Source: Oopsacas minuta (Eukaryota > Animalia > Porifera). From it: 64,000 bases of DNA. The translations under genes and the position numbers were made by a program. This document shows, piece by piece, positions 48,723 through 57,400 of this stretch; the stretch's first letter is position 1, and every line of letters starts with the position of its first letter. The stretch spans positions 248,001-312,000 of the forward strand of contig JAKMXF010000311.1 of NCBI GenBank assembly GCA_024704765.1. Reading direction: 5' to 3'. The notes below the pieces were generated by a model, which saw only the letters and a program-made list of their open reading frames with translations, was not told the DNA's origin and ran no database searches.

Positions 48723-50005
48723 ATATAGGCTAGCATACAGTAAAGAAACAACATACAAATAAGAGAATATCTTTTTGAGGTCATATTTTGCATTTACAGT
48801 AGAATCTACTTATCGAGAAGAGGGACTATTCTAAGAGGGATTCAGATAAATGTTTAGCTACAAACGAGCTAAATAGCAACAAAATATGCAGCCATTTAAG
48901 TCAATACATGGTTCGTTCTCCTTTCATCAAAGAGATACAGTCAAACCAGTTTTTCTTACTATATGCATATTCTTGCTCAGATTGCAAAGAATTTTGGCTT
49001 TAATACATCAGTTTATTCTTACTCGGGTTTTTCTCACTACATTTTCCTGCAAAGAAATAACTTCTAAAAACCGGTTTCGATTGTATTTATACAAACATAA
49101 TACAGATTGTATTGTAGATTAAATCTACAACTCAACATTCTTCCAAAATTCACACTGAAGTCTAAATATCCACAAAATACCGGAAAATATAACCACGCAT
49201 TAATATGTAGGATCAGCAATATAATATCTGTAAAATTACAAACCGCCATCAGAAGTATCTATCTCAACACAGAAAATTATGTTAGATTCCATAAATCTCA
49301 ATAAATACCGCTTCAAAGATTAGAGCCTACCTTAAATTGTTAAAACAGTTTCTTATACAATAATAAAGCCTGAAAGTTATTTGTGATTTTCTATAAACAC
49401 AAAGCAAAATTGTATTTAAGTTTTCCCAATTCGATTGGAACATATTATGAACAAGGGTAGAGCATGTCATTCTCATAAATAGAGGCCACATTTATAGAAT
49501 TAGATATATACATATTGTGTAATGTATTGACATATTTGTAGTCTCATTCAGGTGAAATATGGATACGTCTTTTAGCTTCTTGTAGTTATAAAATGTATGG
49601 AGATTTGGCTATAATATCCTATGTTGAAAGTATAATACGCAGTTCCATAGGCTATGGCAGTTCATTATTCATTCGCTTTGCGGTTGTTCATACAAATACA
49701 GTGGATCCCGGTTATAAGAATATGCCTGGTATAATATTTACAGTGTACTTCCACAAACGGGGTGCCATGGACGCCGAAAAATGCAAATTCCCCGTTCGCT
49801 GTAATACAAGTAATACCACTATTATCTAGAATTTCCAAAATTTTCAGGATTAGATATGTATAACATAATACGGATATGTGTAAACAATAAATGTCTCAGT
49901 AAGCATGTAATTCAAATGACACAAAAGACAAATTAAACTAGATTATTATAAAATACGAACATCTGTGATTTGTATCTCATAAGTGTGATTAGAGAAAGCT
50001 GCTAT

Positions 50006-53000
50006 TTATACCTGAGCTTTTTGTAAATTTGGCGCCAGACATATTGCCTCTAACTTAAATTCCTTCGATACACAATAAACTCTAACTCGAACTGGTGAAA
50101 ACATTTTCAAATCTTCATCGAATGTTTTACCTTCCCCAATTTTCCATGTCATTGTCAAAGAATGCGGAAATGCGGATTTATTAAACACAAAATTCTCTGC
50201 CATACCCTCTTGTATGAGTTTCTCACAATAAACTCGTACTTCAATACCAATACGAGTCAACATGACGTCAAAGGAACAATCTAGAACCTTCATAATACGA
50301 CCATCTTCCTCAATAGGACCTGTATTGAATAAGAAATATGCAAAGAATAATTGATTACACTGTAAGCTTGCCTTCTTCGCATTAGCTTTAGATTCGTTAC
50401 ATTCCTCTGTGACAATATCGTAGTCAGGTTCCGCAATAGTCAGAGCAGGGCCTTGACCAATAGCAGCTGCCAATTGTCTATGAACCATTAGATCAGGGTA
50501 TCTCCGTATAGGAGAAGTAAAATGGGTATATAAATGGAAATTGAGTGCATAATGAAGAGAATTTACTCCTTCCTTAAGTCTAAAATATTTCGCTAAATTC
50601 ATCGGGATTGAGCAAAGATTTGAAAGTATACAAATCTCATCTGCATCATGATTTTCTTGGAAAGCATGTAGAGTTCTCATTATACCCCCAGCACTTGAAA
50701 TATCAATATTAATACCATGATTAGCACACACTTTTTGTAATTTATTTTCTAACTGGTGTTGATAGGGTGAGGGGTGTAGACGTAGGATAGCGTGTTCTGG
50801 GAAATGTTCTGCTAGCTTTTGAGCTACTAGCTTATTTGCTAGTAACATGAATTCTTCTATTAGGAAGTGACTCGCATGTCTAGTGTAAGGTCCGTAACCT
50901 AGAAGAAGAAGTGACAGTGTGTATAACGGCCATCCAGATCTGGTCAAATTGACCGTCATAGTTGACACTGTATAAATTATGAACTATAGAATATAATTGG
51001 TACTAAGGAACTCACCAATAGGATGTCCAGTTACAGGATCAATGGAGAAAGACAAAATAATTTTCTGTAGAATTAATGAACCGTCCTTAATCCTCAGTTC
51101 ACGTAATTTACGAGCTAAATAATTCAGATTCTGAACAGATTCAATCACATCTTTCACTGTTTGACCTTCAACTTTCTTTTCCAATTCCTCCTCTAATTGT
51201 TTCGTGGGTTTTTCTAATATTTCAGCAGCCAGTTCGTAATGCATTTTGATGCAAGAACGTATTATAGATCTGCCATACCATATGTCAAATGGTTGACAAG
51301 ATTCGTTCATTTTAAACACGACAGAAAAAGCTAGACGCTCTACTTTAGGATTAAGACTGCAGAGTTTGTCTGCTAGAACTTCAGGTAACATTCGTATTAC
51401 TTTGTGAGTTAAGTAAACACTTGTACCGCGTTTCTTCGACTCTAAATCTAAGAAAATATATTATAGTATAGTCTCGTTATAACAAAGGTCCCTAGTCCCA
51501 GTTTATGGAGGTAAGGAAATTTTCCCTCTCTTACTTACCTAGAGGAGAATTCTCCTTAACAAAATAGCTAACATCAGCAATATGCACACCAACTTCATAA
51601 GTATTATCATCAATCTTTCTACAGTGTAGAGCATCATCCATATCTCTAGCTGTAGCCGGATCAATTGTATAAATACACTCTTTTGTGTAATCTCTACGGG
51701 ATTTGTATTCATCAGCTGGTATGCTCCAATCTTGCAAAGGTAGACAATCGATTGATTCTTTTGGGAATGTATTGTCTTGTGTAATATCGTTTTCTATGAG
51801 CAGAGCTTCTATTTGTATTTCAAGCTTGCTTGCATCTCCTAAACAGTCTATGAGTTTGCCATTAGCATAAGGAGAATCAACCTAATGGAGAACATAGGAT
51901 AGTAAACTCCTGTTATACCGTTATATCTAACACAAACCTTCCATTCATTCATCTCTGCAGCAAATATAGAAGTATCATATTTGCGTTTATCATCAACATA
52001 ATCTTTAGGACATTGCTGTAATGGTATTATCAACCTAGGTATACGAGAATCTCTGGGAGAGAATAATACTACTTCATTCGGTGTGTCATATGCCTTTAAG
52101 AACCCTACTGTCTTTCTTGAATGTTTATATTCACTTATGAATACTACTTTACCAAATTTTGAATGTTCTAGGTCTTGAAATGATGGTGGTGTATTGGAAT
52201 CTGTGTTTGACGAAGCTACAATCTCAATAAAATAATAATTCTTACAGTAAAACTTCCATAAACGGGGAACTTCTGGAAACTGATTGAAAATAAACAGAGC
52301 GAATTCCTAGTCCATACAAATGAACCTCCACAAATGGGGAATTTGCAGAAACGTGGAAACGGGGGTAGCATTTTTCGGCGTCCCTGATACCCCGTTTGTA
52401 GAGAGGTTATACACCTTATCTTAAAATAACACAGTATAACTTACTATATGCTTCATCAACAATTTTCACTACCACAATATCCATCGGCATAGCTCTATTC
52501 CTATTCACTACACCCAGTACAAGAACATCTCTATCATCCATTGGATTGTACACATATCCTTGCTCGTAGTTCTTCTGGTTAATACGGAATGGACCTTTTA
52601 TAAATAATCCTGTGTTTAAACCTTCTTGTACAGCTGATTCGGGGATGTATTGGGGCATAGGAGGGTCTAGTTTCTTGTTCATGAATGATATGTTCTCCTT
52701 TTGGGCTGGTTTAGATGGTAGAGGAGGATTGTCATGTTGTCTTATTGCTTCTTCAGGTTTTGATGCTATTTCTCCTATGATAATATTCGAGTAATAATGC
52801 AATGGACTTTGTTTGTACAGCGGAGTTCGACTACGGAGACGTGTTTGTAGTACTATATGTTCATTTGTTTATTGATAAATGTGAATAGAGAAAGATATAC
52901 AAATTGTATTTACCTTGGTTTGATTGTGTATATACAACAGGTGTTGTTTTAGATGTAGTAGTAGCATTTTGATCTGATATAATATTATTGTTAAGAGGGT

Positions 53001-54049
53001 TGATTGAAAGCTCTAATGGTGCTGATACTAGCTCTGAATAATCACAAATATGAATAAGTATAATCATATATATTTTAGAGTGTAATCTCCACAAACGGGG
53101 TAGCATTTACCGGCGTTGTGGCTCCCCGTCTATGGAGGTCACACTTGTCCTGTTTGTGACAATTGCTCAATTTCAACACAGCTGTATATTTCAATAAATA
53201 GAAATTCAATTTACCTTCATTCGATGCTACTTTGACTGGTTTGGGTCTACTCTCATTCTGATTAACAGTAATATGACTAGATGCCTGTATGGGAGGAATA
53301 TCCAACTCATCTAGTAACTGTTCCTTAGGTTTTTCTGTATCACTACTCGCTTCTATTTGTCTGGATCTATTATGATGATGTCTACTGCCTCTTCTTCTCG
53401 AATCTTTATGCCTATGTTTAGAATTGTATGATGGATCGGGTTTCTCATTGGGAGCAAAAATACTTTTCTTAATTGGAAATCTATTCAAAGCTTGGTGGAC
53501 GTGAGGTGCAATTCCGTTAGAAATATTCGGGCCAATTGGGTACCCAGGTTGAGGATACTGGTTGTGAAATGGAGCAGGAGATTGTTGCTGGGTCATTTGA
53601 TACAGCCATGCAATACTCGTGTGAGCTAGAACCTTATTAACCGCGAGTAATAACTCAGTAAGAGATGATTCTGAATTCCAATCATAGAATATTGAGTATT
53701 CAACTTTACCCGTATCAGGGTTATAGAAAGGTTGTAAGTATTCGACTGGTATCGCAAAATCGGTTAGAGTTACTTCCGGTGTTGGCAATGGATAACCTCT
53801 ATCCAACCATAAATGTATTAAATAGGATATTCCACCAGTTTGCAATGGAGTAAATCCAGGCCCTGACACCTGAGCAATTTGGTATTCAATAGAATTTTTC
53901 TCTATAGTAGATAGATGCAATTTAAAGTCATTGAAGTCTTGCAATAGTGAAACAGCGTGTTGAATTACTGTATCAGGGTGAGTGTAGTTTAATTTGGCTA
54001 GATGCTTTTTAGCATTGTCCAAATCTTTTCCAGTGCCAGGAGCATCCAT
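50006..54049 (-). CDS. DIS3L2: DIS3-like exonuclease 2 (RNase II/R family: CSD1-CSD2-RNB-S1) with a predicted N-terminal TSG101-like UEV domain
   Basis: CSD1 (GPFRINQKNYEQGY...NRNRAMPMDIVVVKI), catalytic TIDPATARDMDDAL, EVGVHIADVS, SHFLIEEFMLLAN and HYALNFHLYTHFTSPIRRYPDLMVHR. Predicted exons 54049-53215, 53033-52914, 52774-52445, about 52201-51940, about 51885-51539, about 51449-51015 and about 50900-50006. The DIS3L2 identity is strong; the UEV fusion is predicted from splice phase. Confidence 0.9.
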
Positions 54050-54446
54050 ATTTATCGCTAGTTATACTTTACCTATTTTTATAGGCTGTAGTAGGTAGTG
54101 ATAGTGTATAGTGTTAGTAAGTAGTGATAGTGTATAGATTACTGCAAGTACATGTAGTGATTTAAATTGTTACTGTAGTAAATTAGAATTGAAGTATAGA
54201 ATGCGAATTTAACTGCTATTGATTATGTATCATTTCTATAGAAATACTTCTTGAAAAGCTACATAAGTTTCTAACGGTGTATAGCAAGTATAAATGGGAG
54301 AATATAATAACAAAATAATAATAGAAGTTACAAAATACTAGTAAAATAATCATTGTATGTAAGCATGCAAAATGATACAACTCAAAGCTACTATTGCACA
54401 TAAAAGTTTCATGTCTAAATATAAACTACTAATTGAGGGTGAAACA

Positions 54447-57400
54447 CTAGAATTTGAAGGTTAAGAGATAGCGGATTCTATTCTGACTCTCTTTGTAGAT
54501 CAGATATTCGCTTTGATAGAAATTAGATCCTGAATATTTTCCCTGATTTATTGCCTTTCCTTGAGGCACGGTTACTTCATGACCATCGAGCGTAATATTA
54601 GTATCATGCTTGCCATCTAACAAATGAATATTAGAATATAAATATGGAAATAGATCAAAGCTGTAAGGTGTAACCTCTACAAACGGGTTGTCAGGGGTAG
54701 CTAAAAATTGTTTCTGTATGGGACTTGGAGATCGCTCAATATATTTTTTACTTCATTTCAAGAAGTTCCCCGTTACCACAGACTCCATTTGGAGATTACA
54801 CTGTATTTTTCTTCAGGACAAACTTACCAGGTTCAGTTCTACCTCTAGCAACAACACTATCGTATCCACTGGGTGCTTTCACTAGACTACTGTTATCTAT
54901 TGTTATAGTGTTTTCATTTCCTAGAGCTACTTCATTCAAGAACATTATGCCAATTCCATCGCTTGAAGGGCGAACTATACAATGACAAAGGGATGAATCA
55001 TAGAAATAGCTAGCAGGATAAATTGGTAATACATATTCAAATGATAATTAAGGGGCTAAAGGAAGTCTGTGAAGATTCAATCACTACTATTCACCCGTTA
55101 GTTAGTAAATATATTGTGTAGTTGAATTTCACTGATAAATTAATGACAAGATTCATGCAGTAGGTAAACTTGATGTGGGCAATAGAGCTGAACAAGTAAT
55201 TATAGTTTAGGTATTATTCAACTTATAAATGATAGAACTTACCATATCCAGCAGATTTTAACTGTTCAGAAGCAAAATAAATTCCTTTCCCTACTCTCCC
55301 ACCAGAATGCGGCATAATCCTAAGACCACCTTGAAGTATAGCCGCTACCACAGCTACATTAGTGCCATGCCATAGGAGCTTTCTGTTGGCTAGCTTGTCA
55401 TGTTGTTTGTAGCGATCTGAAGCTGAGTGTCTGTTTACACTCCAAATATTCTTTATAACAGGACCGCGACCACTACCCCAAAATCCAGCGCTAGTACTCT
55501 TCGTATTATTAGTATAAGTTTCTAAGATCTAAAGCAAAAATACAATTTAATATACTTACAAACCCATTTTGCAATTTGCCCTCCTGGATTTTCAATATTT
55601 CCCGAGATTTCACGCCATTCCCCATATTCCAGTGTTTTCAACTTTTGCACACGATTCCTTGATAAAACATGAAATACAGGTTGAATAACTGACCTTATAA
55701 AGAGGTGTAGCAGGATCTATCAACTCTAGATCAGTATTCAATAGCTTGTAGTTAACGTCATATGGATGTGGAACCTCTTCTAGCTTTTCATTACCCTTAT
55801 CCTTGTCTTTCTGCATTGATAGAGCTAATTCAATGTCTCCAAGAACCTATAATAGGGATATAGTGTAGAACTGATATAAATCTTTTACATTTCATAGTTC
55901 CCCTATAAGAGTACTAGTTATTGAACCATGGATGTCGTATTTAGTTTATCTGCTTCGATGTTGTCAGGTAATCTCCCATATTTCATAATTATAACATTTA
56001 ATGTACCATTAACATATCTTTCTTCTTCTGTAGAGCTTCTGCATTATTTATTGTAGGAGGACGTTGGCGGCCAAAATCATGAGGAATAACTGTGTAGAAA
56101 TCAGAAGTTAAGTCTGCTAACTTAGATGATCTTTTCGCATTTAGTTCTTTCTCAATTTCCTCTAAAGCTTCGAAGCCTTTCGCAATTTGACCTTTGCTAA
56201 TCTTTCCTAACGGCATCTTCTTAACATCTATAAGATTGTAATTGTTAAGTAGTTGATATGTGAATTTTCGCATTATCAAAATGTGTATATATATAGTGTT
56301 TTGTAAACAAATAATAGAAATCTTGAGATAATCATAGAGACTTGCTCTCAACAGCTACACAAGGGTAACACAATAAAATGAATCCGAATTTCGTACTTCA
56401 AGTGTATCATATATAAATTCGTCATATTACAACCTATTGGTGTATGAAGCGAGGCAACTAACCGATATCAAAGCTCTTCATAGCATTATTAAACATATCA
56501 TTATCGAATATTAGCTTAATCAGTTCTTGTGTAGTCTTGTCCAAAGTACAGCTTTTGATTTTCTTAGGTTTGCTATCTGGCTTAGCATCTATTTCCATAG
56601 CTATCTAGAGGAGGGAATTACATATAATGTGTGACCAAACAAACGGGGTGCTAGGGACGCTAACAAGTGCTACCCTGTCCCCGTCTGTGGAGGTTCATTT
56701 CGTAATGGACAAGGAATGCCATTACGAAATGAATCTCCACAAACAACTCCTGTTTTATCGAAGCTCAAGGGACCGTGATAATTACTTCGATATAAACGAT
56801 GAAATTTATGATACTTTGACGGTTTGGGTGGATAATTGTAAAATTTTCAGACTTCGAAATATCCGGTATTCTGAAGTAACGGGAGTTGACTGTGCATATT
56901 TATAAATATCAGCTGATATGAAATACTACATACTTCATCATCTTCAGAATCTGCCATCTCCAATAGCGTATACTTTCCAGCTGCGGGTACAAAATCATTT
57001 CTATGATCCCAATCATTCTTGGTCTTATCCTTAAACTTCTTTGCGAATTCCTTCTCTGCAGCATCTTGTAGCGGAAATGGTCCTTTCATTGCAGATTGTC
57101 CATCTTCTCCCTTATGAATATTGAATAAGTATAACATAATTATAAAATCCCATGATTTCAACACGAAAATATCCAGAAATATAGTAATGAATGGAAAATT
57201 CCCCCTAAATAAGACGTGAATCTCTGGAGGGTTGCTAAGTATTGTATAACAAATTTAAAAGAATATGATTCTATTTATAGAATTCAACAACTCACAACAC
57301 GGCCCCATCTGTTCCACACATGATAATCCAATCCAGCCTGTAACAATTGTATGACGTAAAATTTATTGTTGTTATGTCCTACATTTGTCTGATTCAGCAT

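What the first reader, a model, noticed from the sequence alone, without database searches (positions are those of the whole stretch)
52440..54049. UEV-DIS3L2 fusion: a ubiquitin-binding-type domain on the uridylated-RNA exonuclease
Seen in sequence: the ATG at 54049 opens an 835-nt exon ending GAA G|gtaaat (53215). A 120-nt exon follows (ttattcag|53033-52914|gtaaat), then tcatag|52774, which begins the DIS3L2 CSD1 exon. Both junctions are GT-AG, phase 1 and in frame (..ASNE|ELVSAP..SNQ|GEIASK..). Unspliced, the first exon only runs into a MITE and stops. Established knowledge: residues about 10-145 align with the TSG101/Vps23 UEV (YTHPDTVIQHAVSLL ~ YKYRDLTVRETVNVI; IHLWLDRGYPLPTP ~ ICLWLLDTYPYNPP; GKVEYSIFYDW ~ GKIYLPYLHEW). 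There is no Cys at the E2 active-site position, so the fold is catalytically dead. The RNB catalytic motif DPATARDMDDAL is intact. Characterised DIS3L2 proteins have only a short disordered N-terminus. Inference: a nuclease recruited through ubiquitin or P(T/S)AP motifs, for example to ubiquitylated stalled ribosomes, ESCRT/endosomal RNPs or retroelement and viral Gag particles. This would couple ubiquitin signalling directly to oligo(U)-dependent 3'-5' RNA decay.
Basis: partly seen in the sequence, partly recalled or inferred. Interest (0 to 1): 0.9.

Follow-up and report, generated by a model that had tools for sequence, protein, structure and literature searches.

The report
UEV domain fused to DIS3L2 exonuclease
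In this small animal genome, probably a glass sponge, and in six related assemblies, the RNA-degrading enzyme DIS3L2 carries an extra N-terminal domain that is a diverged, inactive copy of the ubiquitin-binding UEV domain of TSG101; the fusion is real and conserved, but what the domain binds is unknown.

Summary
The ATG at 54049 opens an 835-nt exon. It is spliced (53215|53033, then 52914|52774) to a complete DIS3L2 body, giving a 7-exon gene of about 1,076 aa on the minus strand. One run (X4) behaves as RNA. It has a contig joint at 53033|53215, loose ends matching 52914|52774, and joints at four further introns.

Six related assemblies keep the same ORF directly upstream of DIS3L2. In five of them the phase-1 donor and phase-1 acceptor are the same; the sixth (L015) was not checked at the junction. 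In one relative the only gap is a 64-nt intron.

The N-terminal about 150 aa is a diverged TSG101-type UEV. Pfam UEV is below threshold (17.3 bits against 27). Profile comparison links it (99.5%, E 1.7e-22) to a sister UEV family that passes Pfam and matches TSG101 UEV structures (E 4e-10). It has no cysteine and is under strong purifying selection.

The TSG101 residues I recall as binding ubiquitin and PTAP are not conserved. The ubiquitin co-fold gave no answer and the monomer models are poor. The fusion and the homology are therefore supported, while the proposed ubiquitin or PTAP recruitment remains inference.

No paper in the held library describes this architecture. The scan had already noted the paralogous UEV locus in this genome, but not this fusion.

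The parts
53591..54049 (-). Residues 1-153: diverged, cysteine-free TSG101-type UEV domain (first part of exon 1).
   Evidence: Pfam UEV E 0.0045, 17.3 bits, covering profile positions 2-111 of 121, below the cut-off of 27. hhalign to the sister UEV family 99.5%, E 1.7e-22. That family matches TSG101 UEV at E 4e-10. The joint profile matches TSG101 UEV at E 1e-7. Atlas features point to UFC1, UEV and UQ_con. pN is 0.16-0.26 while pS is saturated.
53215..53590 (-). Rest of exon 1: Gln/Pro-rich stretch, a basic Arg/Lys/His/Ser cluster, then an acidic stretch ending in the conserved VK(V/I)xxxE|G exon end. Poorly conserved linker.
   Evidence: Only 20-35% identity between lineages, against 57-70% in the UEV. 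The basic cluster and the exon end are conserved. No Pfam hit.
53034..53214 (-). Intron 1 (181 nt, GT-AG), containing a short repeat also found in intron 3.
   Evidence: X4 joint 53033|53215, depth about 880. Repeat families D1, D3 and I1.
52914..53033 (-). Exon 2, a 120-nt phase 1-1 linker exon. It is variable between lineages: 105 nt in L001 and absent in L002.
   Evidence: (loose ends at 52776 and 52913).
52445..52774 (-). Exon 3: start of the DIS3L2 body and cold-shock domain 1.
   Evidence: Pfam Rrp44_CSD1 at 28.7 bits. Aligns to human DIS3L2 residues 38-118, E 3e-12. X4 joint 52215|52445.
51938..52215 (-). Exon 4: first half of CSD2.
   Evidence: OB_Dis3 profile positions 2-45. The donor at 51938 is fixed by X4 loose ends at 51883 and 51935. 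The alternative donor at 51932 is also in frame but does not fit those loose ends.
51539..51881 (-). Exon 5: end of CSD2 and start of RNB, with the DPATARDMDDAL motif.
   Evidence: OB_Dis3 positions 47-77 and RNB positions 1-53. X4 joint 51447|51539.
51016..51447 (-). Exon 6: middle of RNB.
   Evidence: RNB positions 56-174, 108 bits. X4 joint 50896|51014 with the cut shifted by 2.
50006..50898 (-). Exon 7: end of RNB, the S1 / Dis3l2 C-terminal domain, and the stop codon.
   Evidence: RNB 112.7 bits and Dis3l2_C_term 48.5 bits. Best solved relative is human DIS3L2, E 4e-50.

Best explanation
One gene on the minus strand (54049 to 50006; 7 exons; about 1,076 aa) encodes the genome's only DIS3L2 3'-5' exoribonuclease. 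It has an N-terminal extension of about 345 residues.

Shown: the extension starts with a diverged, cysteine-free, TSG101-type UEV domain of about 150 residues, followed by a fast-evolving Pro/Gln-rich and basic linker. It is spliced in frame to a complete CSD1-CSD2-RNB-S1 body. The fusion is conserved with the same splice phases in related lineages and is under purifying selection. The same genome also keeps a canonical TSG101 and a stand-alone UEV plus Pro-rich paralog, which is the fused domain's closest relative.

Inferred: the domain arose by duplication of that paralog and fusion to DIS3L2. It acts as a protein-recognition module that brings or holds the nuclease on particular protein-marked RNPs. 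Ubiquitin or a ubiquitylated protein, such as a stalled ribosome, is the single most likely ligand class, at roughly 35-40%. The logic would be that of the CUE-domain endonuclease Cue2.
For: - Splicing: X4 joints and loose ends at all six introns; open frame across all exons.
- Conservation: six relatives (P0001, P0002, P0007-P0010; 54-71% identical in the UEV) all lie directly upstream of DIS3L2 exons on the same strand, with PARP further upstream.
- Splice phase: the GAA G|GT donor and the AG| acceptor (AG|GAGAA in four) are both phase 1 in the window and five relatives. L002 has only a 64-nt intron between the UEV exon and the CSD1 exon.
- Selection: UEV pN 0.16-0.26 while pS is saturated.
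- UEV homology. No Cys in residues 1-160, and Glu or His at the E2 active-site column.
- DIS3L2 identity.
- Gene content: the only other RNB gene is a PIN-containing DIS3. Canonical TSG101, with UEV and Vps23_core, is on C110. The paralog is on C324.
- Precedent for a ubiquitin-binding domain on an RNA nuclease: Cue2 (PMC6598757, PMC9841427).
Against: - The DIS3L2-linked UEVs alone do not reach any solved UEV by HMM, and Pfam UEV is below its cut-off. The UEV assignment is therefore transitive.
- AlphaFold models are poor (pLDDT 41 and 51), so the fold is not shown independently. The Foldseek hits to TSG101 UEV have TM of only 0.40-0.45.
- The TSG101 ubiquitin- and PTAP-contact residues are not conserved (residue roles are from my own knowledge of the TSG101 literature).
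- The ubiquitin co-fold gave no answer.
- RNA evidence is from assembled contigs of one sample. Each junction rests on one or two contigs. An extra DIS3L2-only isoform from a start inside the gene is not excluded; a Met in the LDPPM motif is conserved.
Confidence: 0.7

Rival explanations
1. The UEV-like domain no longer binds ubiquitin or PTAP. It serves another role: binding a lineage-specific partner, self-association, or intramolecular regulation of the nuclease (for example by docking on the linker or covering the RNA entry funnel).
For: The known TSG101 contact residues are replaced. Other surfaces are invariant within the fused family, namely STxEKN on the hairpin, HLWL and QPFYN, which suggests a conserved but different interface. 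The domain is so diverged that Pfam misses it.
Against: UEV and UBC-like domains bind ubiquitin through more than one surface, so loss of the TSG101 residues does not exclude binding. No partner or intramolecular contact was identified here.
Confidence: 0.3
2. The domain keeps the other TSG101 function: it binds a short proline-rich motif of the P(T/S)AP kind and brings DIS3L2 to ESCRT-0/ALIX-type adaptors or to retroelement Gag particles.
For: It is homologous to the TSG101 UEV. It is followed by a Pro-rich stretch, as in TSG101. The paralog sits next to Argonaute/Piwi and eIF4E genes.
Against: The pocket residues Y63, Y68 and M95 of TSG101 are L, I/V/T and P/Q here. The C-terminal part of the groove could not be aligned. 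No P(T/S)AP motif is conserved in the linker.
Confidence: 0.12
3. There are two separate genes, a small UEV plus Pro-rich protein and an ordinary DIS3L2. The joints come from read-through or conjoined transcripts without a functional fused protein.
For: Unspliced, exon 1 ends in a stop 2-46 codons past the donor in every lineage, so intron retention would give a stand-alone protein like the paralog. A Met in LDPPM is conserved. The RNA evidence is contigs from one sample.
Against: Donor and acceptor phases and sequences are conserved in the window and five relatives despite saturated synonymous divergence. The cassette exon is always a multiple of 3: 120 nt, 105 nt or absent. A 64-nt intron in L002 leaves no room for a promoter. 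The spliced form is far deeper than the one unspliced contig listed, about 855 against 47 at intron 3. No conserved stop follows the conserved exon end.
Confidence: 0.06

Closest known systems
DIS3L2 (human, mouse, S. pombe Dis3L2; Perlman-syndrome exonuclease)
   Same: Same domain order CSD1-CSD2-RNB-S1 with the Dis3l2 C-terminal signature. No PIN domain. The RNB motif is intact. Best solved relatives are human and mouse DIS3L2.
   Different: Human residue 38 aligns with about residue 345 here. The sponge protein therefore has about 300 extra N-terminal residues containing a folded UEV-type domain, where the solved DIS3L2 proteins have a short tail.
TSG101 / Vps23 UEV domain (ESCRT-I)
   Same: Homologous over the whole domain by transitive profile evidence. 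No catalytic Cys. Predicted order is two N-terminal helices, four strands and a C-terminal helix. A Pro-rich stretch follows, as in TSG101.
   Different: There is no coiled coil and no Vps23 core; the domain is attached to a nuclease instead. The ubiquitin- and PTAP-contact residues are replaced. Pfam UEV is below its cut-off. The genome keeps a separate canonical TSG101.
Stand-alone UEV plus Pro-rich paralog of the same clade (G000 C324; P0003, P0005, P0006)
   Same: Closest relative of the fused domain: 24-31% identity, hhalign E 1.7e-22. It shares the N-terminal helix, the PF(Y/L)N loop and the C-terminal W-containing helix.
   Different: It passes the Pfam UEV cut-off. It is not linked to DIS3L2 and sits next to Argonaute/Piwi, NHL and mit_SMPDase genes.
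Cue2 / NONU-1 / N4BP2 (CUE-domain SMR endonucleases of no-go decay)
   Same: An RNA nuclease carrying ubiquitin-binding domains that bring it to ubiquitylated collided ribosomes (PMC6598757, PMC9841427). This is the working analogy for the proposed mechanism.
   Different: Unrelated folds (CUE and SMR against UEV and RNB), and an endonuclease rather than a processive 3'-5' exonuclease. Ubiquitin binding is shown for Cue2 and not for this protein.

Membership tests
DIS3L2 (RNase II/R family, DIS3-like exonuclease 2) | RNB catalytic domain with an intact acidic motif | tested here: met
   RNB profile covered from position 1 to 324 across exons 5-7 (72.6, 108.3 and 112.7 bits). DPATARDMDDAL is present.
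DIS3L2 (RNase II/R family, DIS3-like exonuclease 2) | Two N-terminal cold-shock domains and a C-terminal S1 / Dis3l2 C-terminal domain | tested here: met
   Rrp44_CSD1 28.7 bits; OB_Dis3 45.4 and 26.1 bits; Dis3l2_C_term 48.5 bits; Rrp44_S1 25.3 bits. All are above their cut-offs.
DIS3L2 (RNase II/R family, DIS3-like exonuclease 2) | No PIN domain, and closer to DIS3L2 than to DIS3 or DIS3L1 | tested here: met
   No PIN hit in any exon. Human DIS3L2 scores E 4e-50, against DIS3 at 2e-24 and DIS3L1 at 3e-21. The genome's PIN-containing DIS3 is a separate gene on C300.
DIS3L2 (RNase II/R family, DIS3-like exonuclease 2) | Preference for 3'-oligouridylated RNA | not testable with these tools
   This needs a biochemical assay. 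The genome has three PAP_assoc (non-canonical nucleotidyl transferase) genes that could supply U-tails.
UEV domain, TSG101/Vps23 type (Pfam PF05743) | Match to the family model above its curated cut-off | tested here: not met
   No hit on the 278-aa exon product. 17.3 bits, E 0.0045, on residues 1-160 against a cut-off of 27. Five of the 7 fused-family members match only below the cut-off.
UEV domain, TSG101/Vps23 type (Pfam PF05743) | Homology to established UEV domains over the whole domain | tested here: met
   Fused family against sister family: hhalign 99.5%, E 1.7e-22, 152 columns. The sister family passes Pfam UEV at 29.8-51 bits and matches TSG101 UEV chains at E 4e-10. The joint profile matches TSG101 residues 9-135 at E 1e-7. 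The fused family alone finds nothing.
UEV domain, TSG101/Vps23 type (Pfam PF05743) | UBC-like alpha/beta fold | tested here: inconclusive
   AlphaFold pLDDT 41 (single sequence) and 51 (7 sequences). Foldseek on the weak model still ranks TSG101/Vps23 UEV first (E 1e-4, TM 0.40-0.45), then E2 enzymes. Atlas features give UFC1, UEV and UQ_con.
UEV domain, TSG101/Vps23 type (Pfam PF05743) | No catalytic cysteine at the E2 active-site position | tested here: met
   No Cys anywhere in window residues 1-160. The aligned column is Glu or His in all 7 fused-family members.
UEV domain, TSG101/Vps23 type (Pfam PF05743) | Conserved ubiquitin-contact (hairpin tongue, lip) and P(T/S)AP-pocket residues of TSG101 | tested here: not met
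   V43, F44, N45, D46 and F88 correspond to I49, E50, K51, N52 and T94. Y63, Y68 and M95 correspond to L69, I74 and P101 (mapping). The roles of these residues are from my own knowledge of the TSG101 literature, not from a tool.
UEV domain, TSG101/Vps23 type (Pfam PF05743) | Binds ubiquitin | tested here: inconclusive
   The co-fold with the genome's own ubiquitin (L020:1495-1722) scored 0.00. The tool's verdict was 'no answer'. This needs a binding assay.

The most novel reading that the evidence does not exclude
In glass sponges the only DIS3L2 is directly recruited by a UEV domain to ubiquitylated RNPs, such as collided or stalled ribosomes. Ubiquitin marking would then be read out by a processive 3'-5' exonuclease. 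This would be an evolutionary 'natural experiment' that couples ubiquitin signalling to uridylation-dependent RNA decay in one polypeptide.
Probability: 0.3. Interest if true: 0.75.

Novelty: new variant of a known kind. Interest (0 to 1): 0.6.

Why it matters
DIS3L2 is the cytoplasmic nuclease that clears uridylated RNAs, and its loss causes Perlman syndrome in people. How it is directed to substrates other than through the U-tail is poorly understood. A lineage in which the sole DIS3L2 has carried a conserved protein-recognition domain of the ubiquitin-system type for a long time suggests that protein marks can also direct this nuclease. It also gives a concrete construct to test.

The case has a practical lesson. 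The domain falls below Pfam's threshold, so automatic annotation would show this protein as an ordinary DIS3L2 with an unexplained N-terminus. It was recognisable only through a clade-specific sister family.

Tried and rejected
- phmmer of exon 1 against solved structures found only chance hits.
- A profile of the fused UEVs alone against solved structures found nothing.
- AlphaFold on a single sequence and on 7 sequences gave pLDDT 41 and 51, too poor for surface analysis. The Foldseek result on that model is used only as weak concordant evidence.
- Complex prediction of the UEV with the genome's ubiquitin scored 0.00, verdict 'no answer'. The alignment was not used by the tool. This is not evidence either way.
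- The look-up of sequencing runs listed no run on record as RNA. X4 was recognised as RNA only from its joints.
- Literature searches for DIS3L2 with UEV, and for UEV domain with RNB, found only unrelated papers. The Oopsacas genome paper mentions none of DIS3, TSG101 or ESCRT.
- I could not search full-length annotated proteins, because no reference exists for the spliced 1,076-aa product and no single ORF is long enough for the length filter. Whether public gene models of this or related genomes already show the fused protein is therefore unknown.
- The 1.84-billion-protein library held no relative of the domain longer than 411 aa. Records of the window's own genome appear to be left out.
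- The attempt to tie the 'BUSC20-1 ... METAG' records to Vazella pourtalesii metagenomes by accession failed.
- The donor at 51932 was rejected in favour of 51938 because only the latter fits the loose ends.
Full report
**What is in the sequence.**
On the minus strand the ATG at 54049 is preceded by an in-frame TAA 15 nt upstream. It opens an 835-nt exon that ends GAAG|GTAAAT at 53215. A 120-nt exon follows (53033-52914). The next exon starts at 52774 after TCATAG. Unspliced, the frame continues 46 codons into the intron, through a short repeat also present in intron 3, and stops (324-aa ORF; repeats).

Downstream, four more exons complete an open frame that ends at 50006.

**Transcript evidence.**
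No run is on record as RNA. When the four runs of the single sample were laid on 49700-55600, X1-X3 gave co-linear genomic contigs. X4 gave contigs that skip segments with CT..AC ends, which is GT..AG on the minus strand.
- Second junction (52914|52774): seen as loose ends. At 52776 two contigs continue with TGGTTTGATT, the start of exon 2 on the plus strand. At 52913 one contig is preceded by GTTTTGATGCTATTTCT, the top of exon 3.
- Fourth intron: loose ends at 51883 and 51935 fix it as 51938|51881. They exclude the alternative in-frame donor at 51932 found.
- An X4 contig (53545-54090) covers the ATG.
- One unspliced contig across intron 3 has depth 47, against 855 for the spliced form.

The gene is therefore (54049-53215)(53033-52914)(52774-52445)(52215-51938)(51881-51539)(51447-51016)(50898-50006), about 1,076 aa. 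This rests on assembled contigs from one sample, with one or two contigs per junction.

**The body is DIS3L2.**
- Pfam finds Rrp44_CSD1 in exon 3, and OB_Dis3 (CSD2) split neatly across exons 4 and 5 (profile positions 2-45 and 47-77).
- RNB runs from position 1 to 324 across exons 5-7. Dis3l2_C_term and S1 are in exon 7.
- The best solved relatives are human DIS3L2 (E 4e-50) and mouse DIS3L2 (E 1e-46), well ahead of DIS3 (2e-24) and DIS3L1 (3e-21).
- Human residue 38 aligns with about residue 345 of this protein, so about 300 residues are extra.
- The genome (61.46 Mb, 365 contigs) has only one other RNB gene. It is an intronless 969-aa DIS3 with a PIN domain. This is therefore the only DIS3L2.

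**The N-terminal domain.**

*Direct tests are weak.*
- No Pfam hit on the 278-aa exon product.
- No solved relative by phmmer.
- On residues 1-160, Pfam UEV scores only 17.3 bits (E 0.0045) against a cut-off of 27, although it covers profile positions 2-111 of 121.
- Language-model features put the domain among UFC1, UEV and UQ_con clusters.

*The decisive evidence is transitive.*
- An exhaustive HMMER search of 1.84 billion representatives found six relatives.
- Three are close (P0001, P0002, fragment P0004). Three are distant (P0003, P0005, P0006; 28-31% identity; E 6e-16 to 6e-11). The distant ones pass the Pfam UEV cut-off on their own (29.8, 32.9 and 47.1 bits).
- The fused family (A2, 7 sequences) aligns to this sister family (A3) with hhalign probability 99.5%, E 1.7e-22, over 152 columns.
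- A3 matches TSG101 UEV chains at E 4e-10 over the full domain. The joint profile matches TSG101 residues 9-135 at E 1e-7.
- The fused family alone finds no solved UEV.

*Fold and active site.*
- AlphaFold models were poor (pLDDT 41 and 51).
- The predicted order of elements, two N-terminal helices, four strands and a C-terminal helix, fits a TSG101-type UEV.
- Foldseek on the weak model ranks TSG101/Vps23 UEV first and E2 enzymes next, at TM 0.40-0.45.
- There is no cysteine in residues 1-160. The column of the E2 active-site Cys is Glu or His in all seven members.

I conclude that this is a diverged, catalytically dead UEV of the TSG101 kind. It is not a threshold-level member of PF05743.

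**Conservation of the fusion.**
- A word-indexed search added P0007-P0010.
- For all six full-length relatives the contig shows the same order on one strand: PARP, the UEV ORF, then DIS3L2 exons. The fragment P0004 also lies downstream of PARP.
- The UEV exon ends at a conserved VK(V/I)xxxE followed by G|GT in phase 1. The CSD1 exon begins after an AG in phase 1, mostly AG|GAGAA. This holds in the window and five relatives. L015 was not resolved by my motif search.
- The small exon between them is 120 nt here, 105 nt in L001 and absent in L002. In L002 a single 64-nt intron joins the two parts. All versions keep the frame.
- Across these lineages synonymous sites are saturated (pS 0.75-0.79). 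pN in the UEV is 0.16-0.26. The linker is only 20-35% identical.

These findings argue strongly against two independent genes or an accidental read-through.

**Origin.**
The same genome keeps three UEV genes:
- A canonical TSG101, with UEV and Vps23_core 1.2 kb apart on C110.
- A stand-alone UEV plus Pro-rich paralog on C324, next to an Argonaute/Piwi gene and an NHL gene. Its neighbourhood is conserved in relatives.
- The fused copy described here.

The fused domain is closest to that paralog and cannot reach TSG101 without it. The likely history is TSG101, then the paralog, then a copy fused to DIS3L2 that evolved faster. This is inference.

**Organism.**
The assembly size and the count of 365 contigs match the published Oopsacas minuta (Hexactinellida) assembly of 365 scaffolds. 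That project produced RNA-seq, DNA-seq and mate-pair libraries (PMC10280926), which fits one RNA-like and three DNA-like runs from one study. This identification is an inference. The relatives come from unnamed ENA assemblies, presumably other glass sponges, which I could not verify.

**How it most likely works.**

*Shown:*
- A complete DIS3L2 with a conserved N-terminal UEV-type module and a flexible linker.
- The linker carries a conserved basic cluster.

*Inferred:*
- The module is a targeting or docking domain. Ubiquitin is the ligand expected from family history.
- A nuclease carrying ubiquitin-binding domains has a precedent in Cue2 at collided ribosomes (PMC6598757, PMC9841427).

*Against a simple transfer of function:*
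- The TSG101 residues that, to my knowledge of the literature, contact ubiquitin (V43, F44, N45, D46, F88) are I49, E50, K51, N52 and T94 here. Those lining the PTAP pocket (Y63, Y68, M95) are L69, I74 and P101 (mapping).
- The hairpin STxEKN, HLWL and QPFYN are invariant within the fused family. This points to a conserved interface of unknown specificity.
- The co-fold with the genome's own ubiquitin gave no answer.

I put ubiquitin or a ubiquitylated target at about 35-40%, another protein partner or an intramolecular role at about 30%, and a PTAP-like motif at about 12%.

Three PAP_assoc genes show that candidate tailing enzymes exist. Uridine preference itself was not testable.

**Novelty.**
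No paper in the held library links UEV with DIS3L2 or RNB. No relative of this domain longer than 411 aa exists in the representative library. I could not query full-length annotated proteins, and the window's own genome records seem to be withheld, so a silent gene model with this fusion may already exist in public proteomes. Because Pfam misses the domain, such a model would not be annotated as UEV.

I rate it a new variant of a known kind: DIS3L2 with a new, conserved, clade-restricted N-terminal domain. Interest is moderate to high. The structural claim is solid and the functional claim is open.

Noticed in passing
G000:C324:292842-293882 (L011:2842-3882); relatives L003:219-1199, L004:10001-11236, L005:10001-11125: A stand-alone UEV plus long Pro-rich paralog that passes Pfam UEV. 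It sits just downstream of an Argonaute/Piwi gene and near NHL-repeat, kinase-like and mit_SMPDase genes, with conserved neighbourhood in three other assemblies. All copies end in a conserved ...ARKV... tail. I did not test whether it is spliced to anything downstream. It is the closest relative of the DIS3L2-fused UEV.
   Followed up: partly
window:52312-52420 and 53079-53150; also 55019-55215: Short repeat units sharing TCTCCACAAACGGGGTAGCATTT..CGGCGT lie in introns 1 and 3, in direct and inverted copies. Contigs also show a one-base insertion variant at 52311.
   Followed up: partly
window:54447-56351 and beyond, minus strand: The upstream neighbour is a PARP gene: a PARP_reg-like ORF, and a catalytic C-terminus ending at the stop at 54447. 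It lies only about 400 nt from the UEV-DIS3L2 ATG. The PARP then UEV-DIS3L2 order is conserved in all relatives. RNA contig depths over its 3' exons are 10-40 times those over DIS3L2, although contig depth is a poor measure.
   Followed up: no
window:52914-53033; L001:9012-9116; L002:8947-9010: The linker exon between the UEV exon and the CSD1 exon is evolutionarily labile: 120 nt here, 105 nt in L001, and absent in L002. It always keeps phase 1-1.
   Followed up: yes
G000:C300:225239-228148 (L008:970-3879, minus): The genome's DIS3 (PIN, CSD1, CSD2, RNB, S1) is a single uninterrupted 969-aa ORF. The DIS3L2 gene has six introns. No DIS3L1-like third RNB gene was found.
   Followed up: partly
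window:54618-54830: In the RNA-like run one low-depth contig (12.8) skips 211 nt with non-canonical AA..CA ends inside the PARP 3' region. This may be an assembly artefact or a repeat collapse.
   Followed up: no
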